A stretch of 63,672 bases of DNA, the filler included, from Octopus bimaculoides (lineage: Eukaryota): NCBI RefSeq assembly GCF_001194135.2. It is 6 parts of 6 records of this genome, joined end to end, with 100 filler letters (N's around TTAATTAATTAA, not from the genome) between each part and the next. Parts side by side here need not be neighbours in the genome. Positions count along the whole stretch, not along the records: positions 6,367 to 38,199 come from NC_069005.1; 5 more parts are not named here. One strand, 5' to 3'. Position numbers and translations under genes: made by a program. A model generated the notes under the pieces. That model ran no database searches and was not told the origin of the DNA. It saw nothing but the letters and a program-made list of their open reading frames with translations. Of the stretch, positions 2,206-38,199 are shown one piece after another (position 1 is the first letter of the stretch; every line of letters starts with the position of its first letter).

Positions 2206-4985
2206 TAGATATTTTTTATAGGTTTATCGCACATATATTTTTTACACATTTTTTTCTGTATTCTACCTTCCACTCTACTTTTTTCCTGTTTGTATATAAA
2301 CGTGTACATGGGACCTTTTGTGCGCGCTTGTGGATGTGTGCGTATATAGACGTGTGTATAAACCTTTTTTGCGCACGTGTGTATGTGTGTGAGCGTGTTG
2401 CGTGTGTGTGTGTGTGTGTACGAGCTTGTATGCGGGTATGTATATACTTTTTGGTGAATGTGTGGGTGAGCATGTGTTTCAAGTGAGGGTGGATGAGGAT
2501 ATACATATAGGCGCATGTACGTGTGTGTGCGGGCGCGCATGTACGTGGGTGTGCGGGCGCGCACGTGTATGTATGAACTGTACGTTTACGCAAATACTAT
2601 GGACATTTTTACTCCCTTACCTTTACTCCCTCCCCTCACTTAGCGGTCATTCTAATAGCTCTTTTGTCTTAATAACGGTCATTCACTGAGTAATTTCCCT
2701 TTGTTTAACGGTCATTTTCATAACATTTGTTTCGATGACCAGATAATTGAAGAGATGGTGGCGTGAGTTTCTGCTCTGACATCCGAAACTCGGAGTTTTA
2801 TCATGGCTACCGAATAATTGTCACATATCATCTACTGATAAATTCCTCTATTTACATAATATCGAGGTCACTTTCTTTCTTTTGTTGTCTTACCTTTACC
2901 CCTCGCTGGTCACATGTGTCCACTTACTAATTCTTTTCTTCCTTGGTTATCACCGAGCAAACACTCGAACTTACTTCGTCCCACTTCCAGTTCGTTGCTT
3001 CACAGCGTTCAATATACATATAATTTTTCACGTCTGGCCGTATAGCTTTTTCCGTTTGCTTTGCTGTCTTATTTTCTTTTCTGTTTGTTTCCCTGTCTTG
3101 TTTTCTGTCCGGCACTACATTCCTCCATGGTACAAGTTTAATTTGTGTATACAAATTTAATTAGTGGTCCGTGGGAAGAGCCATTTTAACGATGCGTCCT
3201 GCCCTACTCTTCGAAACGCCTGTGTTAGAATAGGGGTAGCTGATGAAGGAAAATGTTCTCTATGTGGCCTGTGTGTGTTCTGTACTCTGGTTATTATTAT
3301 TTTTTGTCTACGTTTTGTTTGCAATGTCCTGTACCCAGATATGCACCTATATGTACAGGTAGACGTAGGTATGCACATACCTGTACGTATATATGCATAT
3401 ACTCATTTATTATTTGTTTTATATATATATATATATATATNNNNNNNNNNNNNNNNNNNNNNNNNNNNNNNNNNNNNNNNNNNNNNNNNNNNNNNNNNNN
3501 NNNNNNNNNNNNNNNNNNNNNNNNNNNNNNNNNNNNNNNNNNNNNNNNNNNNNNNNNNNNNNNNNNNNNNNNNNNNNNNNNNNNNNNNNNNNNNNNNNNN
3601 NNNNNNNNNNNNNNNNNNNNNNNNNNNNNNNNNNNNNNNNNNNNNNNNNNNNNNNNNNNNNNNNNNNNNNNNNNNNNNNNNNNNNNNNNNNNNNNNNNNN
3701 NNNNNNNNNNNNNNNNNNNNNNNNNNNNNNNNNNNNNNNNNNNNNNNNNNNNNNNNNNNNNNNNNNNNNNNNNNNNNNNNNNNNNNNNNNNNNNNNNNNN
3801 NNNNNNNNNNNNNNNNNNNNNNNNNNNNNNNNNNNNNNNNNNNNNNNNNNNNNNNNNNNNNNNNNNNNNNNNNNNNNNNNNNNNNNNNNNNNNNNNNNNN
3901 NNNNNNNNNNNNNNNNNNNNNNNNNNNNNNNNNNNNNNNNNNNNNNNNNNNNNNNNNNNNNNTATATATATATATATATATCTTTATGAATTTGTGTTTT
4001 GTGTTACAAGATTCCTGATATGAAACCGTGTGTTGAAACAGATATTGTTATATTTCGTGATGGTCTATTTGTTTTTGACAAAAAAAGTGACCATCTCGAA
4101 ATACAAAATACATACATACATACATGCAACATACATACATACATACATACATATATGCATACATATATATATATTGTATGTGTATATATATATTGTATGT
4201 GTGTGCATGTGTATATATATTCTCGTACTAAGTTAGATACTTATCGACTGTTCATCTGTCGAAGAAAATGAATTAGGATACTAATCAGTATGATGAAGAA
4301 GTTCAAGTTAGCAGTTATTAATGTTGCCGACTAGACTACGTTCCCATCTAACACAAAGACCTGGCATGTGATCTAGTTAATTCAGAAGCAAATTGATTTT
4401 TATCTGCAGTTACAATATCGTCACATGAGATTCGATAAGAAAAAGATTGAAGCCTGAAACGATAGCTAAAAACGAACATAGTGAGACTGTACTTAGTTCA
4501 TCAAATGCAAAATTATTGTCCACGTAAAAGCATGCCTTTACATGGACAATAATTTCGTCAAAGAAAATGTGAATATTCCGTAGAACTTTAGTAGACAAAA
4601 GACCACCAATAGCACATAATACGCTTTGATCATTTGCCATGAGAAAAAATTGACAATGATACTGTAATTATCGACGTAGCTATATAAAATGACTATAACG
4701 TTTTGTTGAAATGAACTAAAATGAAAAGATCCCTTGATGTACTTGCCGAACCGTGAATAATAAAGACAGGAGTTATNNNNNNNNNNGAACCGTAAATAAT
4801 AAAGACAGGAGTTATTGCAGGAACGAAACTGTGTATTTTCACAGAAGACTTTGTCTTTCATCTCATCGAGGCCGATAACATAAGCACCAATCAAGTGCTG
4901 GGGTTGATTTGCTGGACTCCTCCACACCCGTATCCGGAAGCCTTGTGCCTACCTTAGAAATTATGATTTCTATTGTTGCTAGTGT

Positions 4986-8077: not shown

Positions 8078-8220
8078 GAGTTCAAATTCCACGAAGGTCG
8101 ACTTTACCTTCCATCCTTTCAGAGTCAATAATAAGTACCAGTTGAACACTGGGGTCGGTGTAACTAACTCGTCCCCTCTTGCAAAATTTCTGCCCTTGTG
8201 GCAAAATTTGAAGCCACTTG
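8078..8220 (+). mobile_element. 5'-truncated family-F SINE ending in (ATT)n
   Basis: GAGTTCAAATTCCACGAAGGTCGACTTTACCTTCCATCCTTTC...GTACCAGTT...CTGGGGTCGG followed by an ATT array. Confidence 0.8.
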
Positions 8221-8278
8221 TATTATTATTATTATTATTATTGTTATTGTTATCATTTTTATCATTATTATTATTATA

Positions 8279-8312
<34 letters not shown>

Positions 8313-9746: not shown

Positions 9747-10354
9747 ATATAGGTACATACAAACACATAAATATATATATCTATGCAAGCACACACATAC
9801 ATGATAATGTACAAACCTATATAGATACTTCTTATGCATACATTTATGCGTATATACATACATACAGACAGACAGACACTTACAGACATACATACCTTCC
9901 CACATACGTATATATCTTTACATACATACACACATACTTGCATAGTCCCTTTTATATATCACAGTATTATCAACTGATGTTATTGTTTAGCCCAAGGTCA
10001 GTTCTGACTGAGTAGACACATGATCAAAGATCTTGTAGCTGTCATGTTGTATATGATCAACTATAATTCCCTTGGTGTTTCTGTCAATCCATGGCTGAAC
10101 GAAAATCTTGATATGCCATCATCATCTTATTGATGCTGGTTGCAGAGTTACCTGTTGACAGAGGCCAGCAATGGTTGATAAAATAACAGTCAAACTTTGA
10201 GGTGAATATATTCAATTATATCCCCTGCTCCGAGAGTGTGTCCTTGGTTCAGTGTTAGAAATAAATAACAGATGTTTACTTGGTTTATTTATTTCAGACT
10301 CCTTCACATGTTGTAAGGGTGTTACGTTAGATTTAGTTAAATGATAAACAGTTT

Positions 10355-10655
10355 AGGCGCAGGAGTGGCTGTGTGGTACGTAGCTTGCTGACCAACCACA
10401 TGGTTCCGGGTTCAATCCCACTGCGTGGCACCTTGGGCAAGTGTCTTCAACTATAGCCTCGGGCCGACCAAAGCCTTGTGAGTGGATTTGGTAGACGGAA
10501 ACTGAAAGAAGCCCATCGTATGTGTGTGTGTGTGTGTGTGTGTGTCTGTGTTTGTCCCCCCCACCATCACTTAGCAACCAATGTTGGCGTGTTCATGTCC
10601 CCCTAACATTAGCGGTTCGGCAAAAGACACCGATAAAATAAGTACTAGGCTTACA
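10355..10655 (+). mobile_element. tRNA-derived SINE (family A), head plus body, runs into gap
   Basis: AGGCGCAGGAGTGGCTGTGTGG...GGTTCCGGGTTCAATCCCACTGCGTGGCACCTTGGGCAAG; multiple homologous copies in the window. Confidence 0.88.
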
Positions 10656-11151
10656 NNNNNNNNNNNNNNNNNNNNNNNNNNNNNNNNNNNNNNNNNNNNN
10701 NNNNNNNNNNNNNNNNNNNNNNNNNNNNNNNNNNNNNNNNNNNNNNNNNNNNNNNNNNNNNNNNNNNNNNNNNNNNNNNNNNNNNNNNNNNNNNNNNNNN
10801 NNNNNNNNNNNNNNNNNNNNNNNNNNNNNNNNNNNNNNNNNNNNNNNNNNNNNNNNNNNNNNNNNNNNNNNNNNNNNNNNNNNNNNNNNNNNNNNNNNNN
10901 NNNNNNNNNNNNNNNNNNNNNNNNNNNNNNNNNNNNNNNNNNNNNNNNNNNNNNNNNNNNNNNNNNNNNNNNNNNNNNNNNNNNNNNNNNNNNNNNNNNN
11001 NNNNNNNNNNNNNNNNNNNNNNNNNNNNNNNNNNNNNNNNNNNNNNNNNNNNNNNNNNNNNNNNNNNNNNNNNNNNNNNNNNNNNNNNNNNNNNNNNNNN
11101 NNNNNNNNNNNNNNNNNNNNNNNNNNNNNNATATATATATATATATATACA

Positions 11152-11287
11152 TATATACGACAGGCTTCTTTCAGTTTCCGTCTACCAAATCCACTCACAA
11201 GGCTTTGGTCGGCCCGAGGCTATAGTAGAAAACACTTGCCCAAGGTGCCACGCAGTGGGACTGAACCCGGAACCATGTGGTTGGTAA
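11152..11287 (-). mobile_element. Family-A SINE head region
   Basis: Near-exact reverse complement of about 10390-10520. Confidence 0.88.
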
Positions 11288-11394
11288 TTCTGGGAAAAAC
11301 TGAAATAAAAACCCCCAAAGAACTGCATTACTGTTACATGCGCAGCATCAACAGTTTTCTGTCCCTGTATCTTTCCTCTTGCTTGGAAAGCATA

Positions 11395-12692: not shown

Positions 12693-12851
12693 GGCTTCTT
12701 TCAGTTTCTATCTACCAAATCCACTCACAAGGCTTTGGTCGGCCCGAGGCTATAGTAGAAGACACTTGCCCAATGTGCCACGCAGTGGGACTGAACCCGG
12801 AACCATGTGGTTGGTAAGCAAGCTACTTACCACACAGCCACTCCTACGCCT
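12693..12851 (-). mobile_element. Family-A SINE complete head
   Basis: Reverse complement AGGCGTAGGAGTGGCTGTGTGGTAAGTAGCTTGCTTACCAACCACATGGTTCCGGGTTCAGTCCC... Confidence 0.88.
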
Positions 12852-13025
12852 ATAAAACTTCTTATTGAATTGTGATTTGTCCAACATCATTTGAATTATA
12901 GGATACAGCTTCTTGTTCAGTACTGTTAACATTTGGTTCTTGGATGGTAAGACATACCACAACTCTTGGTGTAATAACTCTGTTGAATACCCAGGTGGCA
13001 GGACATTTCACAGATCCTTATTTAA

Positions 13026-16361: not shown

Positions 16362-16720
16362 ACATTGTATTATGTCAATTTGCCTGTTTATTTTTCAACT
16401 AAGATGACAGGACAATAAAAACAATATACAAACACATATGACATATTATGTCATATCAGTAATAAAAATTAAAAAGGACATTAGTGACCGAAGAAGGGAC
16501 AATGTCTTACAGTTGTTTCAGCCTAGAGGTGACAGATAGAATGAGGCATGTCACTCTAGGCTGAAACAGCTGTAAGACATTGTCCCTTCTTCGGTCACTA
16601 ATGTCCTTTTTAATTTTTATTACTGATATGACATAATATGTCATATGTGTTTGTATATTGTTTTTATTGTCCTGTCATCTTAGTTGAAAAATAAACAGGC
16701 AAATTGACATAATACAATGT
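16362..16720. repeat. 359-bp near-perfect inverted repeat (long hairpin)
   Basis: 16362-16534 pairs with 16549-16720; one mismatch (T/G, wobble-compatible), one single-base bulge, 14-nt loop. Confidence 0.95.
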
Positions 16721-17446: not shown

Positions 17447-17665
17447 AAGGCGGTGAGCTGGCAGAAGCATTAGCACGCCAGGCGAAATGCTTAGCAGTAT
17501 TTTGTCTGTCTTTACGTTCTGAGTTCAAATTCCACCAAGGTCGACTTCACCTTTCATCCTTTTGGGGTTGAGAAATTAAGTACCAGTTGCATACTGGAGT
17601 CGATCTAATCGACTGGTCCCCTCCTCTAAAATTTCAGGCCTTGTGCCTTTAGTAGAAAGGATTAT
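17447..17665 (+). mobile_element. Family-F tRNA-derived SINE flanked by (TTA)n and (ATT)n
   Basis: AAGGCGGTGAGCTGGCAGAAGCATTAGCACGCC...GAGTTCAAATTCC (B box)...GTAGAAAGGATTATT. Confidence 0.88.
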
Positions 17666-17689
17666 TATTGTTTTTGTTGTTGTTATTAC

Positions 17690-17738
<49 letters not shown>

Positions 17739-20013: not shown

Positions 20014-20813
20014 GCATGTTACTGTACACCAATTGGGTGTANNNNNNNNNNNNNNNNNNNNNNNNNNNNNNNNNNNNNNNNNNNNNNNNNNNNNNNNNNN
20101 NNNNNNNNNNNNNNNNNNNNNNNNNNNNNNNNNNNNNNNNNNNNNNNNNNNNNNNNNNNNNNNNNNNNNNNNNNNNNNNNNNNNNNNNNNNNNNNNNNNN
20201 NNNNNNNNNNNNNNNNNNNNNNNNNNNNNNNNNNNNNNNNNNNNNNNNNNNNNNNNNNNNNNNNNNNNNNNNNNNNNNNNNNNNNNNNNNNNNNNNNNNN
20301 NNNNNNNNNNNNNNNNNNNNNNNNNNNNNNNNNNNNNNNNNNNNNNNNNNNNNNNNNNNNNNNNNNNNNNNNNNNNNNNNNNNNNNNNNNNNNNNNNNNN
20401 NNNNNNNNNNNNNNNNNNNNNNNNNNNNNNNNNNNNNNNNNNNNNNNNNNNNNNNNNNNNNNNNNNNNNNNNNNNNNNNNNNNNNNNNNNNNNNNNNNNN
20501 NNNNNNNNNNNNNNNNNNNNNNNNNNNNNNNNNNNNNNNNNNNNNNNNNNNNNNNNNNNNNNNNNNNNNNNNNNNNNNNNNNNNNNNNNNNNNNNNNNNN
20601 NNNNNNNNNNNNNNNNNNNNNNNNNNNNNNNNNNNNNNNNNNNNNNNNNNNNNNNNNNNNNNNNNNNNNNNNNNNNNNNNNNNNNNNNNNNNNNNNNNNN
20701 NNNNNNNNNNNNNNNNNNNNNNNNNNNNNNNNNNNNNNNNNNNNNNNNNNNNNNNNNNNNNNNNNNNNNNNNNNNNNNNNNNNNNNNNNNNNNNNNNNNN
20801 NNNNNNNNNNNNN

Positions 20814-21018
20814 ACAGGCACAACAGAAACAGGAAGTAAGAGTGAGAGAAAGTTGTGGTGAAAGAGTACAGCAGGTTCGCCACCATCCCCTGCAGGAGCC
20901 TCGTGGAGCTTTTTAGGTGTCGCTCAATAAACACTCACAACGCCTGGTCTGGAAATCGAAACCACGATCCTATGACCGCGAGTCCGCTGCCCTAACCACT
21001 GGGCCATTGCGCCTCCAC
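20814..21018 (-). mobile_element. Family-B tRNA-derived SINE (head intact, tail in gap)
   Basis: Minus GTGGAGGCGCAATGGCCCAGTGGTTAGGGCAGCGGACTCGCGGTCATAGGATCGTGGTTTCGATTTCC with A and B boxes; homologous to 35356 and 36288. Confidence 0.88.
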
Positions 21019-21064: not shown

Positions 21065-22276
21065 TCAACCATTAATAGAAACACCCTTCTTCTTTATGAC
21101 ATCTTTCCTTCAGTCAATGAGCTTTTTAATGTCGCCTTCATGAAATTCCTTAGGTTTACAAGTGAAAAAGGAAATTAGCTCATTTTTTACTTTTGCTCTT
21201 GAAGTAAGTCTTCATCAACTCAAAGGTTCTTTCTTTTAAACTTATAATGAGATGGCAATCTCTAGGCGCGAAGTCCTGGAAATATGATGGATAAAACGTA
21301 ATTTCTCAGGCATATTTTTCTAGCTGATCTTTGGTCTTTTGTGCAATATGATGTCTAGCGTTATCGTGATGAAGGGTGACTCCCATTCTGTTTGTTAATG
21401 ATGAACGTTTTTGCTGCAAAGCTGCTTTCAAATATGTTAGCTGTTGGCCAGTATCCATCACCTGTTATTGTTGGATTATCGTGTAGCAGTTTGTGATGAA
21501 TTATTCCAAGCATATTCCACCATACACTCAGAAGAATCTCCCTTGGATGCAGGCCACTTCTGGACTTCTGAGCTGGTTCTTCACCACGACCGAGCCGTTG
21601 ACGTTTTCTCTTGACATTATCGTGAAGAATTTATTTTTCCTCTCCATTAATGACTCTATTCGAAAAACAAGACATTTGCTGCCTAGGATATGTCAATGAT
21701 GCACAACGCTCAACACACTGTTTCCGATTGTCTGCAGAGAGATCATTCCGGACCAATTTCCCAACCTTTGACACTTTACCAAGCCTCTTCAATTCACGTT
21801 GAAGCCCGTGCTTAGTTGCCGAACTGTACCAGTCGGGTTTGCTTCAACGGTGGCTTCCAACACATCAGGATCCAACCCTCTTGGATGTCCTTCACCAGGG
21901 CCGGCTCAAAGTACCGGCAACTCGAGCAGTCACCCAGGGCACCATGTGTTAGGGGACGCCAAGGAAGGTGCGACAAAGACAAGGAAATGTCCACGACCGT
22001 CAGCTTGTACACGCCAAAGTTTAGCTTGCCCGGGGCGCCAGCAACCCTAGGACTGGCCCTGCCCTGCCTTCACTTGATTTTTCCTGCTAGCTGCAGTCCT
22101 CGTTTCTGAATCATAAAAACCATCTTCTGCATGTTTTTTCAGTCACTATGCCATCACCAGAAGTGTTTTGGGGGTGATTTTGCTGCTACGCTTACACTAT
22201 TCCCTTTTTTTGTAAAAAAAAAAAGAAAAAAAAATTAAATTACTTAACGAATGTGTTCTTTGCTTGGAGTGAACAT
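21065..22276 (-). pseudogene. Mariner (DD34D-type) transposase, full length but decayed
   Basis: Minus fragments MFTPSKEHIR; VTEKTCRRWF; GHPRGLDPDVLEATVEANP; GKVSKVGKLV; NGEEK*ILHDNVKRKR; GLHPREILLSVWWNMLGIIH; LHHDNARHH; YFQDFAPRDCHL; FFTCKPKEF. Length about 345 codons after removing the nested MITE; candidate TIR TA|TCAGGTTGTATCG read from 22430 downward. Confidence 0.9.
21896..22066. mobile_element. hAT-like MITE nested in the mariner ORF
   Basis: TIRs CAGGGCCGG / CTGGCCCTG. CCTTCAC is duplicated at 21889-21895 and 22067-22073 (8 bp with one mismatch); excision rejoins the transposase frame EKSSEGHPR. Confidence 0.82.
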
Positions 22277-24721: not shown

Positions 24722-24847
24722 ATGCCACAGCTTGAAGTTCTTTCCAACAACGAAATGAATCTGAACAGGAATTTAGGCTTGCTGCAAGCTTCTGTATCTT
24801 CTATTCTGCAACAACCTGAGGTACCCAAAGGTGGTGCACTTGTTAAG
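24722..24847 (+). CDS. MDR gene exon 1 (MPQLEVL...PKGGALVK)
   Basis: ATG with in-frame upstream TAG; donor AAG|GTAAAT, phase 0. A second in-frame ATG at 24755 is an alternative start. Confidence 0.8.
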
Positions 24848-27846
24848 GTAAATATCTTTCATTTAGTTTCCTTCGTTTAAATATCGTTTGAAAATAATTT
24901 AGTGAAAAGAAAAAAATAATATCAATAAATTAATAAATAAATTTAAATGTAATAAATCGATAAATTTGTAATTGATAAGTAAAATAATTCTGTAATTTGA
25001 ACTTGGAATTCTTTGGATCAAATTTCGAATATGACAATCGACATTACTTTTCAAGTTTTTCTTTTATTAATTAAGGAATGCAAGATCGGTATTCTGAACT
25101 TCGGCTTGTTTTCATATATGAAACAACAGCTGATATAATATTGTTAAGACTGTGACGACTTGAGTTATGCCTTTTGGAGAAAAACAAGGGGTTATTTATA
25201 CAAATTCTCTGAACCCCCTTAACGGATTAATTCATATATGAAAACCTACTTAGATTCATAGCACAGTTCTTGCATAATAGATAGACATGTTGTAACATGA
25301 GTTTAACACTAATAAATTTATTTTAATCAATGATGCAATATCATTTTGTAACTGAAGTTTTATTGTTGCTGCAGGTGTGTTTCGCTGGTGCCTGCTATTC
25401 TGAGGGACATGTACGTAGGAAGGGCTACCGACCTCGTTTTCCTGGTTACGAAATATCTGGCATCATTTATGAGGTTTGCAACTCTCTCCCTAACCGAAAC
25501 CTCAATCCTGGAGATCGGATCATCCTTTACCCCGACGAAGAAATCGCTGATTCTGGGTAAGTCTGCCATTCTATTAAAAACTATTTGGTACATTATTGTT
25601 TTGGAAATTCGTTTTAATATTTTCTGGTATTTTATGGATGTATATTTGGTAGAGATGGACTATATGTAATCTGAACCTTTCCCCCCCGTATTTATTAATT
25701 TTTTTACGGAATCCCACGTTTTAGGCTATGGAGATTCCGATTCTGAAAAAAAAATTTTTGAAAAATTTCAATCCCCGCCCCCGACCAAGCAGGCTATTTA
25801 CATGCTAGAAATAACAGCCAAATCTCACAAAACTAGCGTTAGGGTTACGGTCAGGGTTAGGGTTTGAGTTAGGGTTAGGTTTACCCTGTGGATCTATATA
25901 AAAACCGGGGAGGGGAATCGAAATTTTGAAATTGAGATTTTTGAAAATCTTTTTTCAGAGCCTAAAACGTGGGATTCCGTAAAAAAAAACAAAATTTAAA
26001 AGGGGGGGGGGGTATACCCAGATTACATATACTCCATCTCCACCGTTTTGTGAATATAGGATAAAATTCTCTAAATGTAGTGTATTGTTTTCGATATGTT
26101 TTGGACTCGTTTCGCTATAATTAGGGTGCGAATGTTACGGCCGATTTCAATAGAGAAACACGGACGTCAATAACAATTTCTAAAGAAACAAAGAAAAATA
26201 TTTCAAATATGTGAATCTTAGTGTCCCCGGGTTTAGAAAAAGGTAGTTTACTTTAAAAAAAATTGAAGGAAAAATTACGGTGATTTTTCGAGTAAATAAT
26301 CCAGAAAATGAAAAAAAGTTATCCTTTTTCCGTTCCTATGAAATAGTGTGGAACTTCGAAAGACAGCTATACCAAAACACCATCCACTATAATGTTTTTA
26401 AGTATAAAATATATATTTAGCAAATGCTGTATTATGGGATCCAAATGTAGTAATAGCTCCACACTATTCTTATATACAGGGTGTCCACAAAGTCTGGGTA
26501 CATGGAGATTAACACATACTTTAAGAAATTATTATTTCTTATATTTAATTGTTTATGTTATGATTTTATTTACTTCCATGTACCCAGACTTTGTGGACAC
26601 CCTGTATAAATAAAATAGATTTGTTGCTCTGTGCACGTTGCAGCAGCAGAGATATCTTCAATTTATTTTATGCAATTAGATATTTGATACCTTAAAAATG
26701 ATGATATTAAATTATATATATTTAATGTATTATTCCTTATATTGTATGTTGTTTTTCTGGGTTGTATTTGTGTCGTGAAAACGTTCGGTTGGTTCCTAGT
26801 TATGTTTGGATCCAGTAACCAATTTGGAACAAAAATAACTGAAGTAAACTTTAAAACTTCATAAAATATTAATGTCGAGTCAAACGAATAATGAATAGGA
26901 AGCATTTAACTTGGGGATTAAATCCAACTTGATGTATTTTTCGTTTTTCTCCCTCATTTAATATGAAACCAATTAAAATATGATTTAAAAAAAGCCTATA
27001 TTATGACGTACTCAGTTAAACTTCGTGTGAGTTAGATATTAAAAAATGAATAATAGCAGGAGCTAATTTTTTAATGATTATATATTATAAATATTATTGG
27101 TAGCAGTTCCTCTTAAAGGTTTTAAATGCACAGCAACAATAGATAAAGGCACTAGCTATACGTTCACTAGATTTGCTCAATGAAAAAAAAAAAACCTATC
27201 AAATTTCTCTCAAATCGCTATTAGTCTTGCGTAAGGACACATTACATATTGTAGTCCGACATATTCTAACGAAATAAGAAGAAAAACAAAAAGACAAGGT
27301 AGTGATAAGGCAAGCCTGCTGGGTCGGTGCTGTCACTGGGTTTTTTAAACACAAAGTTGTCTTGTAATAGTTTCTTGTTAGGGGTTACTTGGCAGCTTGT
27401 TGTTCTGCTATGAAAGTATGTCACGAAAGCTGATTGGTTAATTTCTCCACCTTACCTCCCTCTCCTCCATTAAACTAGGATAATTTATGCAATTTATCAA
27501 TGAATTCAGGGTAAACATGTAGTCCTGTTTACAACGGCTTTATTTGTTATGATGTCAGAACAGAAAGTAAAAAAACCAGTTCTTCAGTTTCGTAATTTTT
27601 TTTTCTTTTTATAAATTCTCTGTATTGTCCGGAAAGAACGATAACATTATTATAATTTACTGATGGCCTTGGGCCAAAATTAGAATTTTAATTTGCTGTT
27701 GATCTTATTTACTATCGCCCTCCACTCTTGTGTTTTAATCTATCTAAACCAGTGTTTTTAGTTTTTCGTCCTTGTGCTCTTTGCAACTTGAGGAAAATTA
27801 TCATTGAGGTCAACCTCGCCTTTCATCCTGGGGTTGATGGTATTAA

Positions 27847-27889
<43 letters not shown>

Positions 27890-30800
27890 NNNNNNNNNNN
27901 NNNNNNNNNNNNNNNNNNNNNNNNNNNNNNNNNNNNNNNNNNNNNNNNNNNNNNNNNNNNNNNNNNNNNNNNNNNNNNNNNNNNNNNNNNNNNNNNNNNN
28001 NNNNNNNNNNNNNNNNNNNNNNNNNNNNNNNNNNNNNNNNNNNNNNNNNNNNNNNNNNNNNNNNNNNNNNNNNNNNNNNNNNNNNNNNNNNNNNNNNNNN
28101 NNNNNNNNNNNNNNNNNNNNNNNNNNNNNNNNNNNNNNNNNNNNNNNNNNNNNNNNNNNNNNNNNNNNNNNNNNNNNNNNNNNNNNNNNNNNNNNNNNNN
28201 NNNNNNNNNNNNNNNNNNNNNNNNNNNNNNNNNNNNNNNNNNNNNNNNNNNNNNNNNNNNNNNNNNNNNNATTTTTGGCAGTTACTCTGAATTCTTACCA
28301 GTAAGTGATGTGTCCAAGATATACCAAATTCCTTCTAACATGTCCTTAGCAGTCGCTGCCATGATACCCGGAGGTGGCCTAACTGGCTTCAGTGCCGTCC
28401 TCAAGGCTAAACCACATATCGAAAAACTTGCTGAAGTCAAACGTAAGTTTTTAACACAATCTGACATATTTTCACATATTTTGAACTCTAGTTTTCAACT
28501 GTAATCAATTCAGCAGTGTTTTGCTGGGATGGGGGGAGGGAGAGCGGTGGATTAATTTCTATATAAGATAGAAAGCGAATGAGTAATAGGGATATGTAAA
28601 TGATTATACGGGGAAACTTTATCACCAGAAGTCGAAGCTATTTTGTTTGAGAAGGTAGCTTGACCAGCTAGATATAGCAGCCAGATCACTTTTAAAAATG
28701 GAAAAACATTTCGAAAAAATAAAATTTCGATCGGGATAGCGGTCGTAGTTGGGGAGTCTAATTGATGAACATTGACCTGGTGTTAAATAATCATTTTTGG
28801 TCATATGTCTGCTATATGAAAGTTGACCTTGGGCTAAACTATTTTTTTTTTGTTCGTATTATGCTGTTGTCTTTCTAATTTTTTTTTTATATAAAATTTT
28901 ACTCACCTGACGTTTGTTTTATTTTGTACAGCTATTGTAAACGTGTTAGTGGTCGGAGCAGGTGGTCTGGGACTCTGGACTCTCAGAATGGCTGAATATT
29001 TGCTTGGAGAACACAATACCAACGTCCGAGTGTTTGTGGCTGACAGCAATGTAAGTAGACTATAATGAGATTTACGTTTAGAATGCTTTATAGTAATTCT
29101 AAATCGTTGTAATGCTAGCTCCAGTTAAGCATGTATTGTAGCCTTGTTATACAACCTGGCGCCCTTCCAGCCCCTAACCCATACCTGTTTTCAAGTAAGG
29201 GTTCTCTTAATTCCTCAATCAGGGTTGACCTGTGTCTAAATAACTAGTGATTTCTGGCATCTGACCCAGTTGAGTAAAGTAAGGTACCTTATATTTCAGG
29301 ACCTTATGCAGTGTGGTTTGATCTATCAACTGTTACGTTTGAAAGGAAATTGCATAAAGTTTCGTGTGTACTGATCATTTCTGGTTTATGGATTGCTGAT
29401 TCATAATAATAATAATCCTATTCCTCAAATGTCCTTATAAATCTGTGCTGTCGACAGACAATTCACAGCTGGACTAATATTTGCCATAGTAGAAATCTAG
29501 ATTGCCCCCCCCCCTCTCAAAGTTAATGGAAATAAATACCTGTAATATTCTAGGTGTTTTTGCCTCAAATAACTATCCCAATCCACCACCTCAAAAAATT
29601 TAGAAAATTGTATTTGTCTTGTGAAATAAAATTCCTTACAAGTTTTTATCACCATTTCAGATTGACCGCTTGTTAACTGCTCAGGATCACGGCTGTTACG
29701 ATATCATCCACTGGAATGAAGAAGGTACGATACTATATCTGTTTCTATTTTAAGGGGGTTTGCCTTTGACATTCCTACTTTTACATAGAGTTCAGATAGC
29801 AAAGTTTTTAACTAGGTTAGCCATTGAGACATCGAGTTCAACTTTTTGTTGGATTGGGTGTTCCTTGTTAAAGTACAACATCAGTTTGGTTTAGATGTAG
29901 AATGACATAACCTGGTGAAGAACTTGCTAATTAATACTATAATTGATAGTAACTTTTTACTGACAGGTTTTCTGAGCCATTGACTGTCAGACCTCAATTG
30001 ATATAAGTACTTTATTATGGGACAATTTTATATTGCCCCTGTCTGCCTTTGCACTTTGTGTAGCTTCTGAAAGAATATTTGCAAAATTATTTTCATATTC
30101 AGTAGGTCTGACAAAAAAAATAAAAAAATATTTTAATGCAGAAAAAAAAACAATACAAGAAGTTCCAATAGAAAGTTGAGGACATTTAAAAAATAAAAAA
30201 AATAGCTGTTGCTTATTTCTTGTTGCAAATAATTCTAGTCTTCAAATGACATTTTCATCTTATAATTTTTTAAATTTTTTGCAGACCATGAAGAATACAT
30301 TTGTGAACGAACAATTGAAGCTTGTCATGGTGGTCTTGATGTTGTCATTGATTTTGTTAGTTCACGTCGTACAATGAACAGATCTCTGCAAGTCCTCAAT
30401 AGAGTAAGTATATCTATTCTAACCTCTATCTGTTGTCCATCTTTTTTCTACTGGATATTTGTCGAACTTAACCTTAGGTTGACCAAGGTCTTGTGAGGGA
30501 AGTTTAGTACACTGAAACTATAAGGAGCTCTGATGGAGGGACCATTCCTGTTTTCCGATACTGTAGACTTAGTTTGTTTCCCGATTTAACGCCATAATTT
30601 GGCCCTTAAGTGCCCATTAAAAAAGTTCTCTACTTTGTAAACATTCAGGTTAAGTCTCCAGTTTGAGGATATTTTCTTTCTAACCATTCTTGGGGTTCTC
30701 TGGGAGTGTTTATAGGTGCTTCCCTGGAATGAGCCTTACTTAGATTCATTTTCATTCCTTTTCATTTCATTTAGTAAAATCAGCTAATGCTCTCTAGAAG

Positions 30801-32801
30801 GGCTTGATCTTGAATGAAAAAGGTTGATAGATGAATGTCACAACCCTTGCCCTTTTAATGACATAGGTGTGTTTCTGAAATCGTCTGTAATACATGACTG
30901 TATAACTTTAGCATTTAACTTCACAAATGTACCTCCCCACCTGCCTGGCTCCGATAGAAACATGAATATCACAAGCTTTTTATTCTTTTATTATAATTAT
31001 TATTATTAAAGGCAGTTGAGCTGGCAGAATCGTTAGCATGCCAGACAAAATGCTTAGTAGTATTTCATCTGATGCTACATTCCAAGTTGAAATTCCACTG
31101 AGTTCGACTTTGCCTTCCTTCCTTTGAGGGTCAATGTAATCGACTAGTGTCCCCTTCCCACAAATTTTAGGCTTTGTGCCTACGGTAGAAACGATTATTA
31201 TTATTATTATTATTAAAGGCGGTGAGCTGGCAGAATCATTAATATGCCGCACAGAAAGCTTAGCTGTATTTTGTCTGTCCTTATGTTCTGAGGTTGACTT
31301 TGCCTTCCATCCTTTCGGGGTCGATAAATTAGGTACCAGTTTCGCACTGAGGTCGATCTAATCAATTCATACCCTCCCCCAAAATTGCAGCCCTTGTGGC
31401 AAAATTTGAAACCATTATTATTGTTGTTATTATTATTATTATTATTATTTTCTCTTGTAAAATAGATATATTTGTGTTAGGTTTGTGGGACTATATGAAC
31501 ATTTGACATTGACCTTTTTTTTTTCCCCCCTTTGTGTATCAACAGGAAGGTCTCATCATCGTAGGCGGAAGCTCAGTCACAGAAATGAGTATCAACTTAA
31601 ATGTATTATCTGCTAAACAGCAGAGTATCACCAGTATACCTAAAGGATCTCCAGAAGAATTAGCAGAATTAGTACAGTGCGTGGCATCTGGACGGGTAAG
31701 TTTTCTGCTCCTATCTACCTCTCTCTTTCTCGTTTTGTTCATTCATCAAAACATCTAACACTTGCTGAATCCTACCTTTCAACAACATAATTAAAACCAT
31801 TAACCTTAAGCCTGAAGTTTGATTGACTCAAGGTTGTTTGCTCTGTTCCCTAATCCACCAGTTGCAGGTTCAGTGGTGTTCTGTATATTTTACAGAAGCA
31901 ACTTGTAATTAGAGCCATGTAACTATCTGTAAATATAGGTCCATTTTCCCATTTAGCTTAGATTAGATGAATGATGTTATTGAGGCATTATTACCTTGCT
32001 TGGAAATGGGTGAGGATTGGTAACAGAAAAAACATCTGGGCACTTAAAGTCTGCCTCAACAGATTGGATCACATGGACCTGGAAAAGTGGACATTTGGTG
32101 ATTTAGTGAGTGTGTGTGTGTGTGTGTGTGCATAAATAGTCATTTTATGTCTGTTTTTCATACTGCAATGGTTATTAAACTGGTCATCACAATCCAGGTC
32201 AGTTCTTATTTTGTTACTGCCCATTTAGATGGGCTGGTGAACTGTAGAAAACTCTGCCAAATCAGATTGGAGCCTGGTGTAGCCATCTGGTTCACCAGTC
32301 CTCAGTCAAATCGTCTAACCCATGTTAGCATGGAAAGCGGACGTTAAATGATGATGATAATGGCATTCATCCATAAAAACCATACCAGAACAGCTAATGG
32401 AGCCTGGTACAGCCCCCGGCCTTACCAACTCTGGTCAAACTGTCCAACTTACACTGGCCTGGAAAACCGGCATTAAATGATGATATATATATATATAAAC
32501 ACCCACTTAGATTCATTTCAGTAAACATTGGTGTATATGTAGTAGACACACATAGATATAAATAAATATACACACACATATATAAATAAATATACACACA
32601 CATATATAAATAAATAAACATACACACTTCCCTGCATTTTATTAATGAAATATTTCTCTTTATTTATTTTGACAGGTCAGTCCACCAACGTATGCTGTAT
32701 TTCCTGTTGAAAATGCAAATCAAGTGTTTGAAGATTTAACACTAGCCAGAATCACAGGACGAGCAGTCTTGCGGCTAGGGAACACAAATGTTGACAATTA
32801 A
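24722..32801 (+). CDS. Medium-chain dehydrogenase/reductase (alcohol dehydrogenase-like, resembles 6-hydroxyhexanoate-DH/CAD-like subgroup), 8 exons, 348 aa
   Basis: join(24722-24847,25375-25556,28282-28442,28932-29050,29661-29724,30285-30403,31546-31695,32676-32801) = 1047 nt, no internal stop, all GT-AG with matching phases. Motifs ALVKV..AGACYSE, PGYEISG, GDRI, SGYSEF, GAGGLG, DVVIDFV, GSPEELAELV, ITGRAVL. Confidence 0.92.
25375..25556 (+). CDS. MDR gene exon 2 (VCFAGACYSEGH...PGYEISG...GDRIILYPDEEIADS)
   Basis: Acceptor TGCAG|, donor GG|GTAAGT, phase 2. Confidence 0.92.
25647..26044. mobile_element. Foldback-like MITE with long TIRs and internal TTAGGG repeats (intron 2)
   Basis: GAGATGGACTATATGTAATCTG vs CAGATTACATATACTCCATCTC; 29-bp perfect IR at 25699-25727 / 25959-25987; degenerate TTAGGG run at about 25838-25880. 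Confidence 0.75.
26477..26604. mobile_element. Tc1/mariner-type MITE, 128 bp (intron 2)
   Basis: Perfect 30-bp TIR CAGGGTGTCCACAAAGTCTGGGTACATGGA, flanked by TA on both sides. Confidence 0.92.
28282..28442 (+). CDS. MDR gene exon 3 (YSEFLPV...AAMIPGGGLTGFSAV...EVK)
   Basis: Acceptor GGCAG| just after a gap; donor C|GTAAGT, phase 1. Confidence 0.9.
28932..29050 (+). CDS. MDR gene exon 4 (VLVVGAGGLGLW...VFVADSN), Rossmann motif
   Basis: Acceptor TACAG|, donor AAT|GTAAGT, phase 0. Confidence 0.93.
29661..29724 (+). CDS. MDR gene exon 5 (IDRLLTAQDHGCYDIIHWNEE)
   Basis: Acceptor TTTCAG|, donor AAG|GTACGA, phase 1. Confidence 0.9.
30285..30403 (+). CDS. MDR gene exon 6 (HEEYICERT...GGLDVVIDFVSS...VLNR)
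   Basis: Acceptor TTTGCAG|, donor AGA|GTAAGT, phase 0. Confidence 0.92.
31008..31200 (+). mobile_element. Family-F SINE in intron 6
   Basis: AAAGGCAGTTGAGCTGGCAGAATCGTTAGC...GTAGAAACGATTATT; ATT arrays on both sides. Confidence 0.85.
31215..31413 (+). mobile_element. Second tandem family-F SINE in intron 6
   Basis: AAAGGCGGTGAGCTGGCAGAATC...CATCCTTTCGGGGTCGATAAATTAGGTACCAG; ATT arrays on both sides. Confidence 0.85.
31546..31695 (+). CDS. MDR gene exon 7 (EGLIIVGG...KGSPEELAELVQCVASGR)
   Basis: Acceptor AACAG| after a long pyrimidine tract; donor CGG|GTAAGT, phase 0. Confidence 0.92.
32242..32484 (+). mobile_element. Two tandem retroposon 3' ends with (GAT)n tails (intron 7)
   Basis: First copy is nearly identical to 34784-34903 (...ACCCATGTTAGCATGGAAAGCGGACGTTAAATGATGATG); second copy diverged. 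Tail is RTE-like from recall. Confidence 0.75.
32676..32801 (+). CDS. MDR gene exon 8 (VSPPTYAVFP...ARITGRAVLRLGNTNVDN*)
   Basis: Acceptor GACAG|; stop TAA at 32799-32801; C-terminal GRxVL motif typical of MDRs. Confidence 0.92.
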   Translation, partial: VSPPTYAVFPVENANQVFEDLTLARITGRAVLRLGNTNVDN

Positions 32802-35355: not shown

Positions 35356-35690
35356 GTGGAGGCGCAATGGCCCAGTGGTTTCGATTCCTAGACCAGGCGT
35401 TGTGTGTGTTTATTAAGCGAAAACACCTAAAGCTCCATGAGGCTCCGGCAGGGGATGGTGGCGAACCCCGTTGTACTCTTTCACCACAATTTTCTCTCAC
35501 TCTTACTTCCTGTTTCTGCTGTACCTGTATTTCAAAGGGCCAGCCATGTCACGCTGAATATCCCCGAGAACTACGTTAAGGGTACACGTGTCTGTGGAGT
35601 GCTCAGCCACTTGCATGTTAATTTCACGAGCAGGCTGTTCTGTTGATTGGATCAACTGGAACCCTCGTCGTTGTAACCGACAGAGTGCCA
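35356..35690 (+). mobile_element. Family-B SINE (deletion inside tRNA head)
   Basis: GTGGAGGCGCAATGGCCCAGTGGTT|TCGATTCC; body and tail homologous to 36288-36637 and 20814-21018. Confidence 0.88.
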
Positions 35691-36287: not shown

Positions 36288-36637
36288 GTGGAGGTGCAAT
36301 GGCCCAGTGGTTAGGGCAGCGGATTCCCAGACCGGGCGATGTGAGTGTTTATTGAGGGAAAACACCTAAAGCTCCACGAGGCTCTGGCAGGGGATGGGTG
36401 GCGAACCCTGCTGTACTCTTTCACCACAACTTTCTCTCACTCTTACTTCCTGTTTCTGTTGTGCCTGTAATTCAAAGAATCAGCCTTGTCACACTGTGTC
36501 ACGCTGAATATCCCCAGGGTACACGTGTCTGTGGAATGCTCAGCTGCTTGCACGTTAATTTCACGAGCAGGCTGTTCCGTTGATCAGATCAACTGGAACC
36601 CTCGACGTCGTAAGCGACGGAGTGCCAGCATCAACAA
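36288..36637 (+). mobile_element. Family-B SINE (different head deletion)
   Basis: GTGGAGGTGCAATGGCCCAGTGGTTAGGGCAGCG|GATTCCC...GGAACCCTCGACGTCGTAAGCGACGGAGTGCCA. Confidence 0.88.
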
Positions 36638-37453: not shown

Positions 37454-38199
37454 GTATATATATATGTATATATATATATGTACGTACGTGTGTGTGTGTC
37501 TTTCTGTCTGTGTTTGTCGATTCATTCGGCTAAAAAATTATTCAAGGTGGTGCACCAGAATGGCCGCAGTCTACTAATGACTGAAACAAGTAGAAGATAA
37601 AAGTTATATACTACCCTAGCTGCAGCGCAGTGGGACTGAACCTGAAAGCATGCAGCTGCAAAACAGGCTTCTTAACCACATAGCTGCGCTTGTGCCTACA
37701 TTGCAGGGATTTTCCATTTGTTTTCTAGGAATAAATAATCTTACACACACACACACTTACATAAAGAATAACACAGTATTTGGGTAGTGAATAATGTGCA
37801 CACCCCTTTAATGAATAGTTTCTAATTTTGGCAGAAGGCCAGTGATTTTGAGGGGTGGTGTGGGTAAGTTAGCATGAATCTCATTCACATATTCACAATT
37901 GCCTGGGACTTAATTTGACTCAAACAAAAAGGCTTTCTCACTTTGTTAATGACGGGGGAAAAAACACATGCATAACACATAAAAAAAATATGAATGACTG
38001 TGTGTGTGAGTGCAGGTGTGTATGTTAATGTATGTGTGTGTGAGTGCATGTGTGTGTGAGTGCAGGTGTGTGGTTATGTATGTGTGTGCTGTGTCTGTGT
38101 TTGCGTACACCTTTGCATGCGTCTACATACTCATTTACCACGCTGCTGCTGCTACTACTACTTCCACCACCACCACCACCACCACCACCACCACCACCA

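What the first reader, a model, noticed from the sequence alone, without database searches (positions are those of the whole stretch)
24722..32801. Intact ADH-like gene that has lost its zinc sites: candidate pseudoenzyme or zinc-independent MDR
Seen: a clean 348-aa spliced ORF. Against the classical Zn-ADH pattern, only the first catalytic ligand survives (C49 in GACYSE, normally GxCHSD). The GHE His is Tyr (GY67E, 25447-25449), and the third ligand in CSGLT/CAGxT is Gly (G133, 28370-28372). The CxxCxxC..C structural-zinc lobe is missing between GDRIILYP and DSGY. GAGGLG (165-170) and an acidic residue at the end of the next strand (D194) are kept, which usually indicates NAD(H) binding. Established: MDRs lacking zinc act as quinone/enoyl reductases, RNA binders or lens crystallins (zeta-crystallin), and cephalopods have recruited other enzymes as crystallins. 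Inference: this gene is maintained for a non-classical function.
Basis: partly seen in the sequence, partly recalled or inferred. Interest (0 to 1): 0.72.

Follow-up and report, generated by a model that had tools for sequence, protein, structure and literature searches.

The report
Octopus zinc-less ADH-like gene (Drat family)
This is an intact, strongly conserved octopus gene from an old protostome branch of the alcohol-dehydrogenase superfamily (known in flies as the stress gene Drat) whose members all lack both zinc sites; it is a real and mildly interesting case, already annotated, and not specific to cephalopods.

Summary
Eight GT-AG exons (24722-32801, + strand) give a 348-aa protein that is 100% identical to RefSeq XP_014787951.1, "alcohol dehydrogenase [Octopus bimaculoides]". 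C49 is kept, the catalytic His is Tyr67, the third ligand is Gly133, and the roughly 25-residue four-Cys structural-zinc lobe is absent. GAGGLG and D194 are kept.

The assembly gap hides no exon:
- Exons 2 and 3 join in frame.
- The gapless O. sinensis sequence matching the gap has stop codons in all three frames.
- Argonauta intron 2 has no lobe-like ORF.
- A Sepia pharaonis transcript joins ...EIADSG|YTEF directly.
- None of 63 relatives has the lobe.

The gene belongs to a family that includes insect Drat/CG1600. That gene is hypoxia-induced, protects against hypoxia when over-expressed, and is required for ethanol-induced apoptosis. His67 occurs in 0/63 family members, C49 in 62/63 and E68 in 63/63. 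All named zinc-less members are protostomes. The nearest relatives keep every zinc ligand and the lobe; they come from amphioxus, a tunicate, a hemichordate, a starfish, a sponge and the annelid Owenia (which also has a zinc-less copy).

dN/dS within cephalopods is about 0.03 (dS saturated; pN/pS 0.07-0.12). The likeliest function is a zinc-independent NAD(H)-dependent reductase or redox-linked stress protein. The biochemistry is unknown, and nothing supports a crystallin role.

The parts
24722..24847 (+). Exon 1 (ATG, codons 1-42)
   Evidence: The donor is GT. The N-terminus MPQLEVLSNNEMNLN matches the Argonauta, O. sinensis and Sepia orthologues.
25375..25556 (+). Exon 2: GACYSE (C49 at 25393-25395), PGYE (Y67 at 25447-25449, E68 at 25450-25452), GDRIILYPDEEIADSG. 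The donor is phase 2.
   Evidence: Ligand equivalence comes from the alignments.
25557..28281 (+). Intron 2, containing the assembly gap at 27890-28270 preceded by a (CA)n microsatellite at 27848-27889. It holds no hidden exon.
   Evidence: The equivalent gapless O. sinensis stretch (L005 4944-5284) has stops in all three frames. The Sepia transcript L002 joins the flanking exons directly.
28282..28442 (+). Exon 3: YSEFLPV...AAMIPGGGLTGF (G133 at 28370-28372, in place of the third catalytic Cys)
28932..29050 (+). Exon 4: Rossmann beta-alpha-beta with GAGGLG (28955-28972) and D194 (29042-29044)
29661..29724 (+). Exon 5: IDRLLTAQDHGCYDIIHWNEE (invariant W214 at 29712-29714)
30285..30403 (+). Exon 6: DHEEYICERTIEACHGGLDVVIDFVSSRRTMNRSL. 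Carries the family-specific residues E220, E225, R226, C231 (30323-30325), R246 (30368-30370) and R250 (30380-30382).
31546..31695 (+). Exon 7: EGLIIVGG...AKQQSI (Q283 at 31621-31623)...ASGR
32676..32801 (+). Exon 8: VSPPTYAVFP...ITGRAVLRLGNTNVDN plus the TAA stop (32799-32801)

Best explanation
The locus is the Octopus bimaculoides orthologue of a protostome-wide subfamily of medium-chain dehydrogenase/reductases. [quoted passage not shown]

Origin. The subfamily descends from a classical two-zinc alcohol dehydrogenase. Its closest relatives, in deuterostome invertebrates, a sponge and the annelid Owenia, still carry CH[ST]D, GHE, a 4-Cys lobe and LPCSGLT. The zinc-less branch most likely arose by an old duplication. 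It lost the catalytic His, usually the third Cys, and the entire structural-zinc lobe.

Shown here:
- the intact gene model;
- the absence of a complete zinc ligand set;
- the family membership;
- strong purifying selection;
- retention of the ADH two-domain fold (AF2 model of the 92%-identical Argonauta orthologue) and of the GxGxxG dinucleotide motif.

Inferred:
- The protein binds no catalytic or structural zinc and still binds NAD(H); D194 favours NAD over NADP in lophotrochozoans.
- It works either as a zinc-independent hydride-transfer reductase on an activated C=C, C=N or quinone-type substrate, as plant DPAS does after substitutions at the same two ligand positions, or as a redox-state-linked stress protein.
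- The near-invariant Cys49, Glu68, Arg246 and Arg250 would form the new functional site.
- By analogy with fly Drat, the physiological context is probably tolerance to hypoxia and metabolic stress.
For: Gene model and identity.

No missing exon.

Ligand mapping to solved Zn-ADHs.

Family conservation over 63 sequences:
- His at position 67 in 0/63.
- Segment G88 to Y104 is 16-24 residues in all 63, with no CxxC motif.
- C49 in 62/63 and E68 in 63/63.
- G165 in 57/63, G167 in 61/63, G168 in 56/63.
- D194 in 46/63.
- W214, E220, D240, R246, R250 and Q283 invariant.

Selection: pN 0.046 against pS 0.67 versus Argonauta, and pN 0.085 against pS 0.735 versus Sepia.

Link to Drat. [quoted passage not shown] Published CG1600/Drat qPCR primers encode IASYHFA, NECLYE and RFHDIE, which occur exactly in the drosophilid members.

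Sister group. A profile search and table split the hits cleanly into a zinc-less class and a full-zinc class. Named zinc-less members are all protostomes. Full-zinc members come from Branchiostoma, Styela, Ptychodera, Asterias, Sycon and Owenia. The zinc-less class is a single split in NJ trees, with 68/100 bootstrap support after removing the diagnostic columns.

Fold. The AF2 model has pLDDT 85.2 and pTM 0.84. The best Foldseek matches are Zn-ADHs such as AdhP 4gkv and 4eez, with the zinc-less DPAS 8b27 also among the hits.

Precedent. DPAS lacks the catalytic zinc because of substitutions at the same His and Cys positions, yet it is an active reductase (PMC12224309).

Fly phenotypes: PMC2670512, PMC4040708, PMC9616736, PMC6787081.
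Against: - No biochemical data exist for any family member in the literature I could reach.
- Zinc absence is inferred from ligand loss, not measured.
- The Ser/Thr proton-relay position (51) is variable across the family, and D194 is Ser in insects. Cofactor preference, and even cofactor binding, may therefore differ between lineages.
- Eleven of 63 members keep Cys at position 133, so some lineages could still bind a metal through Cys, Glu and Cys.
- dS is saturated, so omega is only approximate; pN/pS of 0.07-0.12 is the safer bound.
- The tree is a simple NJ analysis with moderate support.
- I could not inspect model coordinates.
Confidence: 0.72

Rival explanations
1. Pseudoenzyme or redox sensor. 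The protein keeps the ADH fold, and perhaps NAD(H) binding, but catalyses nothing. It would act as a scaffold or sensor coupling the NADH/NAD+ ratio or thiol redox state (Cys49) to stress and cell-death pathways.
For: - All classical catalytic elements except Cys49 and Glu68 are gone, and the Ser/Thr48-equivalent is not conserved.
- The class-specific invariant residues form a charged surface-like helix and loop (E220, E225, R226, R246, R250) in the coenzyme domain.
- Fly Drat phenotypes are regulatory or stress-type. It is required for ethanol-induced apoptosis although Adh and Aldh are not, and it is induced by hypoxia and dehydration.
- Insects carry a Ser-rich low-complexity insert next to Cys49.
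Against: - GxGxxG and the overall cleft-forming residues are conserved as in active MDRs.
- Zinc-less ADH-lineage enzymes such as DPAS are fully active.
- Very low dN/dS spread over the whole length is typical of enzymes.
Confidence: 0.2
2. The protein still binds a catalytic metal through an alternative ligand set (Cys49, Glu68 and another residue or water) and is a variant metallo-dehydrogenase.
For: - Cys49 (62/63) and Glu68 (63/63) are retained long after the other ligands were lost.
- Eleven of 63 members also keep Cys at position 133.
- Sorbitol dehydrogenase-type MDRs use a Cys/His/Glu set (my own knowledge, not tested here).
Against: - Octopus has Gly at 133 and Tyr at 67.
- Position 67 is hydrophobic or aromatic in most members (Y, F, L, V, I, M) and is never His, Cys or Asp (Glu in one of 63).
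- No conserved replacement ligand appears in the class-specific list.
Confidence: 0.05
3. Assembly or annotation artefact: the zinc lobe sits on an exon hidden in the 27890-28270 gap, or the gene is a decaying pseudogene.
For: A gap lies in intron 2 exactly where the lobe would be encoded. The acceptor is only 11 nt from the gap edge.
Against: - The gapless O. sinensis equivalent has stops in all three frames.
- The Argonauta intron has no such ORF.
- The Sepia transcript joins the exons directly.
- 63 of 63 relatives lack the lobe.
- dN/dS of about 0.03 excludes decay.
Confidence: 0.01
4. Cephalopod lens crystallin recruited from an MDR, analogous to zeta-crystallin.
For: One source names a gastropod homologue 'zeta-crystallin-like', an automatic label.
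Against: - The family predates cephalopods by hundreds of millions of years and is conserved in eyeless and lens-less taxa, including bivalves, bryozoans, nematodes and tardigrades.
- It is closer to Zn-ADHs than to QOR/zeta-crystallin: PDB E about 1e-13 against 2.6e-7 for 1qor, and TIGR02824 scores 67.8 bits against a cut-off of 296.8.
Confidence: 0.02

Closest known systems
[quoted passage not shown]
   Same: - Same family: 32-37% identity over about 90% of the length, E 1e-45 to 1e-60.
- Same signature: G[AV]CY, PG[YF]E without His, no Cys lobe, [HQ]WNE, DFxxxxRxxxR, PPP...GRA[IV]L.
- Published CG1600/Drat primers encode peptides present in the drosophilid members.
   Different: - Insects carry a 20-50-residue Ser-rich insert after Cys49.
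- Insects have Ser instead of Asp194, Thr or Ala at position 133, and GTGGLA instead of GAGGLG.
- The functional data (hypoxia tolerance, ethanol-induced apoptosis, glial induction on dehydration) exist only for insects.
Classical tetrameric Zn-ADHs (E. coli AdhP 4gkv, Geobacillus ADH 1rjw/6iqd, Sulfolobus ADH 1jvb) and the unnamed animal 'alcohol dehydrogenase-like' group in amphioxus, Styela, Ptychodera, Asterias, Sycon and Owenia
   Same: - Same fold: Foldseek E about 1e-22, TM about 0.7.
- These are the best sequence matches outside the family.
- Shared motifs: LLIVGAGGLGLW, AD, [IV]xW, DFV, PPP, GRAV.
   Different: Those proteins keep C-H-[ST]-D, GHE, the third Cys (LPCSGLT) and a 40-46-residue lobe with 4-6 Cys. 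The octopus protein has C-Y-S-E, GYE, PGGGLT and a 17-residue connector with no Cys.
Plant DPAS (dihydroprecondylocarpine acetate synthase; PDB 8b27, 8b1v)
   Same: - It is an ADH-lineage MDR that has lost its catalytic zinc through substitutions at the same two coordination positions, the His and the third Cys.
- It works as an NADPH-dependent 1,4-reductase (PMC12224309).
- It appears among the structural matches.
   Different: - It is an independent origin inside the plant CAD clade.
- I did not find it stated in the text read that DPAS retains the structural-zinc lobe.
- It keeps the Ser/Thr acid-base residue.
- It shares only about 20% identity with the octopus family.
Zeta-crystallin / quinone oxidoreductase (QOR, PIG3) MDRs
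   Same: No zinc ligands, no structural lobe, and a comparable length. Automatic annotation pipelines often give family members these names.
   Different: - The relationship is more distant: 1qor E 2.6e-7; TIGR02824 67.8 bits against a cut-off of 296.8; PRK10754 42.5 against 348.
- From my own knowledge, QORs have Asn or another residue, not Cys, at the position of Cys49.
- The Drat family clusters with Zn-type ADHs instead.

Membership tests
Drat-type zinc-less MDR subfamily (protostomes) | High-scoring full-length similarity to insect Drat and to the mollusc, annelid, brachiopod, bryozoan and nemertean members | tested here: met
   molluscs 55-64% identity (E down to 1e-145); insects named Drat 32-37% (E 1e-45 to 1e-60). 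The next-best solved ADHs reach only E about 1e-13.
Drat-type zinc-less MDR subfamily (protostomes) | Signature: G-A-C-Y, P-G-[YF..]-E (no His), 16-24-residue connector instead of the Cys lobe, [HQ]-W-N-E, D-F-x-[ST]-[ST]-x-R-x-x-x-R, Q283 | tested here: met
   The octopus protein has GACY, PGYE, a 17-residue connector, HWNE, DFVSSRRTMNR and Q283.
Drat-type zinc-less MDR subfamily (protostomes) | Falls inside the zinc-less clade in a tree | tested here: met
   The zinc-less class forms one split in NJ trees, with 68/100 bootstrap support once the diagnostic columns are removed. The method is simple, so this is moderate evidence.
Drat-type zinc-less MDR subfamily (protostomes) | Stress-linked function (hypoxia, ethanol, dehydration) as in flies and bees | not testable with these tools
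   Only literature on insects is available. There are no cephalopod expression or phenotype data here.
Classical zinc-dependent alcohol dehydrogenase (MDR) | GroES-like domain plus Rossmann two-domain fold; Pfam ADH_N and ADH_zinc_N | tested here: met
   ADH_zinc_N 50 bits, ADH_N 26.9 bits (only just above the cut-off of 23.5, and truncated). Searches give the AF2 model and Foldseek matches.
Classical zinc-dependent alcohol dehydrogenase (MDR) | Catalytic zinc triad Cys / His / Cys (or Glu) | tested here: not met
   Cys49 is kept, His is replaced by Tyr67, and Cys by Gly133. His occurs in 0/63 family members.
Classical zinc-dependent alcohol dehydrogenase (MDR) | Structural zinc lobe with four Cys | tested here: not met
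   The connector is 17 residues with no Cys, against 40-46 residues with 4-6 Cys in the zinc-type relatives. No hidden exon exists.
Classical zinc-dependent alcohol dehydrogenase (MDR) | GxGxxG dinucleotide fold and an acidic residue at the end of beta-B (NAD preference) | tested here: met
   GAGGLG 165-170 and D194. Actual cofactor binding was not tested.
Classical zinc-dependent alcohol dehydrogenase (MDR) | Equivalog-level match to a named enzyme (AdhP, Ahr, TDH and others) | tested here: not met
   The best match is AdhP NF006940 at 70.3 bits against a cut-off of 344. All 21 NCBIfam hits fall far below their cut-offs.
Zeta-crystallin / quinone oxidoreductase | Sequence membership (TIGR02824 PIG3 family, PRK10754 QOR) | tested here: not met
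   67.8 against 296.8 bits, and 42.5 against 348 bits; 1qor E 2.6e-7, weaker than the Zn-ADH matches.
Zeta-crystallin / quinone oxidoreductase | High expression in the lens (crystallin role) | not testable with these tools
   No tissue expression data were available. The Sepia transcript comes from a whole-animal library.

The most novel reading that the evidence does not exclude
Drat-type proteins are not enzymes. They would be NAD(H)- or thiol-redox-sensing pseudo-dehydrogenases that arose once in early protostomes from a zinc ADH. The near-invariant Cys49, freed from zinc, would act as a redox-reactive switch. The invariant Arg246/Arg250 and acidic-helix surface would act as a partner-binding site. 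Together they would couple hypoxic or ethanol-driven NADH/NAD+ shifts to cell-survival decisions. The octopus gene would then be the lophotrochozoan representative of an unrecognised stress-signalling module.
Probability: 0.15. Interest if true: 0.7.

Novelty: new member of a known kind. Interest (0 to 1): 0.35.

Why it matters
The gene itself is ordinary in being already annotated and conserved. The wider comparison gives three useful results.

1. The labels 'alcohol dehydrogenase' and 'zinc binding' attached to this octopus gene and to fly Drat/CG1600 are almost certainly wrong. PMC2670512, for example, states that CG1600 is 'involved in zinc binding'. No family member has a complete zinc site.

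2. Among named sequences, the Drat family is confined to protostomes. It is a zinc-less offshoot of a zinc-ADH group that survives in deuterostome invertebrates, a sponge and at least one annelid. This is a clean natural case of metal-site loss followed by more than 500 million years of constraint.

3. The analysis points to residues for studying Drat's unknown biochemistry: Cys49, Glu68, Arg246, Arg250 and Gln283. That biochemistry matters for hypoxia tolerance and ethanol-induced cell death in flies.

Tried and rejected
I used the 92%-identical, equal-length Argonauta orthologue P0001 as the first row instead.
- The chromosome-level O. bimaculoides record (L004) carries the same gap, so it could not resolve it. 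The O. sinensis locus L005 did.
- I looked for a lobe exon three ways: blastn between the octopus and Argonauta introns, a CxxCxxC scan, and tblastn with a lobe sequence recalled from memory. None found anything meaningful.
- Rfam found nothing in the piece.
- The primary Drat paper (Chen et al. 2012, Cell Death Differ) is not held. Its findings are cited second-hand from PMC4040708.
- No held paper discusses the zinc ligands of Drat/CG1600.
- A first mafft L-INS-i run timed out and was replaced by --auto.
- At a strict threshold, the search for class-specific positions gave only A48 and R246. A looser threshold was needed to obtain the fuller list.
- Crystallin recruitment and a hidden exon were both considered and rejected (see the rival explanations).
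- I could not inspect model coordinates, so no geometric test for alternative metal ligands was possible.
Full report
**1. What is in the sequence**

The piece (6367-38199) is AT-rich eukaryotic DNA, 37% G+C, with many assembly gaps and microsatellites. On the + strand, eight open segments with canonical GT-AG borders assemble into a 1047-nt CDS. The exons are 24722-24847, 25375-25556, 28282-28442, 28932-29050, 29661-29724, 30285-30403, 31546-31695 and 32676-32801.

The 348-aa product is 100% identical to XP_014787951.1 / XP_052832747.1, "alcohol dehydrogenase [Octopus bimaculoides]". It is 99% identical to the O. sinensis / O. vulgaris protein. The same 8080-bp gene lies on CM046625.1 of GCA_001194135.2 and carries the same gap.

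**2.

- C49 at 25393-25395
- Y67 at 25447-25449
- G133 at 28370-28372
- GAGGLG at 28955-28972
- D194 at 29042-29044

HMMER alignments to solved Zn-ADHs put C49 on the first catalytic Cys, Y67 on the His of GHE and G133 on the Cys of "lCaGvT". They jump over about 24 residues of the target between query residues 91 and 100, which is the structural-zinc lobe. Pfam sees a truncated ADH_N (residues 36-95, 26.9 bits) plus normal ADH_zinc_N and ADH_zinc_N_2 domains. No NCBIfam equivalog comes near its cut-off; the best is AdhP at 70 bits against 344, and PIG3-type QOR scores 68 against 297.

**3. The gap**

Five independent lines show that no exon is hidden in the gap.
- Exon 2 ends in phase 2 (..GAT TCT GG|GTAAGT). 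Exon 3 starts 11 nt after the gap (TTTGGCAG|T TAC TCT), giving DSG-YSEF in frame.
- In the gapless O. sinensis locus L005, the window's flanks align up to position 4943 and from 5285. The roughly 341 nt between them contain stop codons in all three frames and no Cys-rich ORF.
- The Argonauta hians locus L001 has the same eight exons and a 4.6-kb N-free intron 2. That intron has no block conserved with octopus and no lobe-like ORF.
- Intron-less transcript contigs of a protein 85% identical read ...GAAATTGCAGATTCTGGTTATACTGAATTC... (EIADSGYTEF) without interruption. One of them, SRR3011300, is a Sepia pharaonis whole-animal transcriptome (PMC5541922).
- None of 63 aligned relatives has the lobe.

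**4. Selection**

Nei-Gojobori counts give pN 0.046 and pS 0.67 against Argonauta, and pN 0.085 and pS 0.735 against Sepia. The estimated omega is about 0.03. Because dS is saturated, the raw ratio pN/pS of 0.07-0.12 is the conservative figure. The gene is under strong purifying selection and is not a decaying pseudogene.

**5. The family**

The homologue search returned many molluscs at 55-64% identity. It also returned Owenia (annelid), Lingula (brachiopod), bryozoans and nemerteans at 40-50%. [quoted passage not shown]

Published qPCR primers for D. melanogaster CG1600/Drat encode IASYHFA, NECLYE and RFHDIE. These peptides occur exactly in the drosophilid members of my alignment. The insect branch is therefore Drat.

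Conservation across 63 sequences:

| Position | State |
|---|---|
| 49 | Cys in 62/63 |
| 67 (His in Zn-ADHs) | His in 0/63; Y, F, N, M, L, V, I, S, E or T instead |
| 68 | Glu in 63/63 |
| 133 | G 30, C 11, T 10, A 7, S 4, N 1 |
| Connector G88-Y104 | 16-24 residues |
| GxGGxG | largely intact |
| 194 | Asp in 46/63, Ser in insects |
| W214, E220, D240, R246, R250, Q283 | invariant |

The Ser/Thr proton-relay position (51) is not conserved. Zinc-lessness is thus an ancient, clade-wide character and not an octopus event.

**6. Where the family came from**

A profile search of 1.8 billion representative proteins found 136 clusters with E below 1e-30. Tabulating the diagnostic columns split the hits cleanly into two classes:
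- A zinc-less class with G[AV]CY, PG[YF]E, a 16-18-residue connector with 0-1 Cys, and DFxxxxRxxxR.
- A full-zinc class with CH[ST]D, GHE, a 40-46-residue lobe with 4-6 Cys, and LPCSGLT.

Named zinc-less members are all protostomes. Beyond those listed above, they include a copepod, a tardigrade, a nematomorph and a nematode. Named full-zinc relatives come from Branchiostoma, Styela, Ptychodera, Asterias, the sponge Sycon and the annelid Owenia, which also has a zinc-less copy.

In NJ trees the zinc-less class forms one split, with 68/100 bootstrap support after removing the diagnostic columns. Its sister group contains the amphioxus and Owenia zinc-type proteins. The simplest reading is an old duplication of a zinc ADH, followed by loss of both metal sites in one copy before protostomes radiated. 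The tree method is crude, so this remains an inference.

Residues conserved in the zinc-less class but not in its zinc relatives are A48, Y50, G134, E216, E220, E225, R226, C231, R246, R250 and Q283.

**7. Structure**

The spliced octopus protein could not be submitted to the structure tool. I modelled the Argonauta orthologue instead, which has the same length, 92% identity and identical diagnostic residues. The model has pLDDT 85.2 and pTM 0.84, with low confidence only in residues 1-22 and in the loop 53-58 after Cys49.

The best Foldseek matches in the PDB are zinc ADHs: L. lactis 4eez, E. coli AdhP 4gkv, Geobacillus 6iqd and R. ruber ADH-A, with TM about 0.7 and 19-24% identity. The zinc-less plant enzyme DPAS (8b27, 8b1v) is also among the hits.

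**8. How it probably works**

What is shown: the ADH fold, an intact dinucleotide motif, no complete zinc ligand set, and strong constraint.

What is inferred: the protein is metal-free and still binds NAD(H). Classical alcohol oxidation is unlikely because there is no Lewis-acid zinc and the Ser/Thr relay is not conserved.

The best precedent is DPAS. Substitutions at the same His and Cys positions remove its catalytic zinc, and the enzyme performs NADPH-dependent 1,4-reductions of iminium and enal substrates (PMC12224309).

Fly genetics place Drat in stress physiology:
- It is induced by constant and intermittent hypoxia, and is protective when over-expressed (PMC2670512).
- It is required for ethanol-induced apoptosis (PMC4040708, citing Chen et al. 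2012).
- It is induced in glia by dehydration (PMC9616736).
- It tracks hypoxia and aggression in the bee brain (PMC6787081).

My confidence in each claim:

| Claim | Probability |
|---|---|
| Family assignment and zinc-lessness | about 0.9 |
| Still an NAD(P)H-dependent, zinc-independent reductase | about 0.55 |
| Non-catalytic redox or partner-binding protein | about 0.2 |
| Residual metal binding through other ligands | about 0.05 |
| Crystallin role | about 0.02 |
| Hidden-exon artefact | about 0.01 |

**9. Comparison with known families, and novelty**

The gene is a member of the Drat subfamily: similarity, signature and clade were all tested and met. It is not a member of the classical Zn-ADHs in the functional sense, because both zinc-site tests failed. 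It is not a member of the QOR/zeta-crystallin family either, because the model cut-offs were not met and it is closer to the Zn-ADHs.

It is already annotated in RefSeq, so this is a new (cephalopod) member of a known but biochemically uncharacterised kind. I found no held paper noting that the Drat family lacks the zinc ligands. The hypoxia paper repeats the automatic "zinc binding" annotation.

The interest is moderate. Correcting the annotation, the protostome-only distribution and the list of constrained residues are all useful. None of them is very surprising for the MDR superfamily, where zinc loss has happened repeatedly.

Noticed in passing
window 21364-21843 (- strand): A degenerate mariner-type transposase fragment. 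The open stretch 21364-21630 hits Pfam Transposase_1 (PF01359) at E 3e-13. The adjacent stretch 21634-21843 looks like the N-terminal part by eye but has no Pfam hit.
   Followed up: partly
window 16362-16528 / 16554-16720: A long, near-perfect inverted repeat: 167-nt arms, 99% complementary, 25-nt loop, made of complex sequence rather than microsatellite. It could be a foldback element or MITE, or an assembly artefact.
   Followed up: no
window 17447-17523, 31010-31086, 31216-31292; also 8132-8293, 17577-17738, 31330-31491: Interspersed SINE-like repeats at 69-83% identity. Two families each have copies inside intron 6 of the gene as well as upstream of it (families D3 and D4).
   Followed up: no
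window 35383-35690 and 36322-36627; related piece near 20813-20934 (- strand): A repeat about 310 bp long, duplicated about 940 bp apart at 89-90% identity. A third related copy abuts the gap at 20042-20813. All share the open stretch '...LHEAPAGDGGEP..LFHHNFLSLLLPVS..'. It has no Pfam hit and is probably an uncharacterised octopus repeat.
   Followed up: no
window 10337-10527, 11149-11299, 12693-12869, 37614-37674: Copies, in both direct and inverted orientation, of a short repeat containing 'GCAGTGGGACTGAACCCGGAACCATGTGG'. It may be a tRNA-derived SINE core (D5, D9, I15, I16). Rfam found no tRNA or other RNA family at gathering threshold.
   Followed up: partly
related proteins P0093, P0098, P0104, P0107, P0118, P0119 (alignment A1, columns about 146-200): Insect and collembolan Drat proteins carry a 20-50-residue Ser-rich low-complexity insertion directly after the conserved Cys49. 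Lophotrochozoans lack it. In the AF2 model of the Argonauta orthologue (which lacks the insert), the corresponding loop, residues 53-58, has low confidence.
   Followed up: no
related proteins P0064 versus P0149 and P0155 (Owenia fusiformis): The annelid Owenia has both a zinc-less Drat-type protein and two full-zinc relatives. The two classes are therefore paralogues, at least in spiralians. Whether octopus keeps a zinc-type copy was not checked.
   Followed up: partly
locus L002 469-1599 (Sepia pharaonis transcript): The 376-aa call for P0002 starts at an upstream ATG inside what is probably the 5' UTR. The conserved start MPQLE is at L002 553 and gives 348 aa, as in octopus.
   Followed up: yes
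public annotation of the family: Sources give this one orthologous group at least eight different names: alcohol dehydrogenase, quinone oxidoreductase, zeta-crystallin-like, cinnamyl alcohol dehydrogenase 6/8, geraniol dehydrogenase 1, NADP-dependent ADH C1, zinc-type ADH-like C1773.06c and VAT-1 homologue. All are automatic labels and none is supported by the diagnostic residues.
   Followed up: yes
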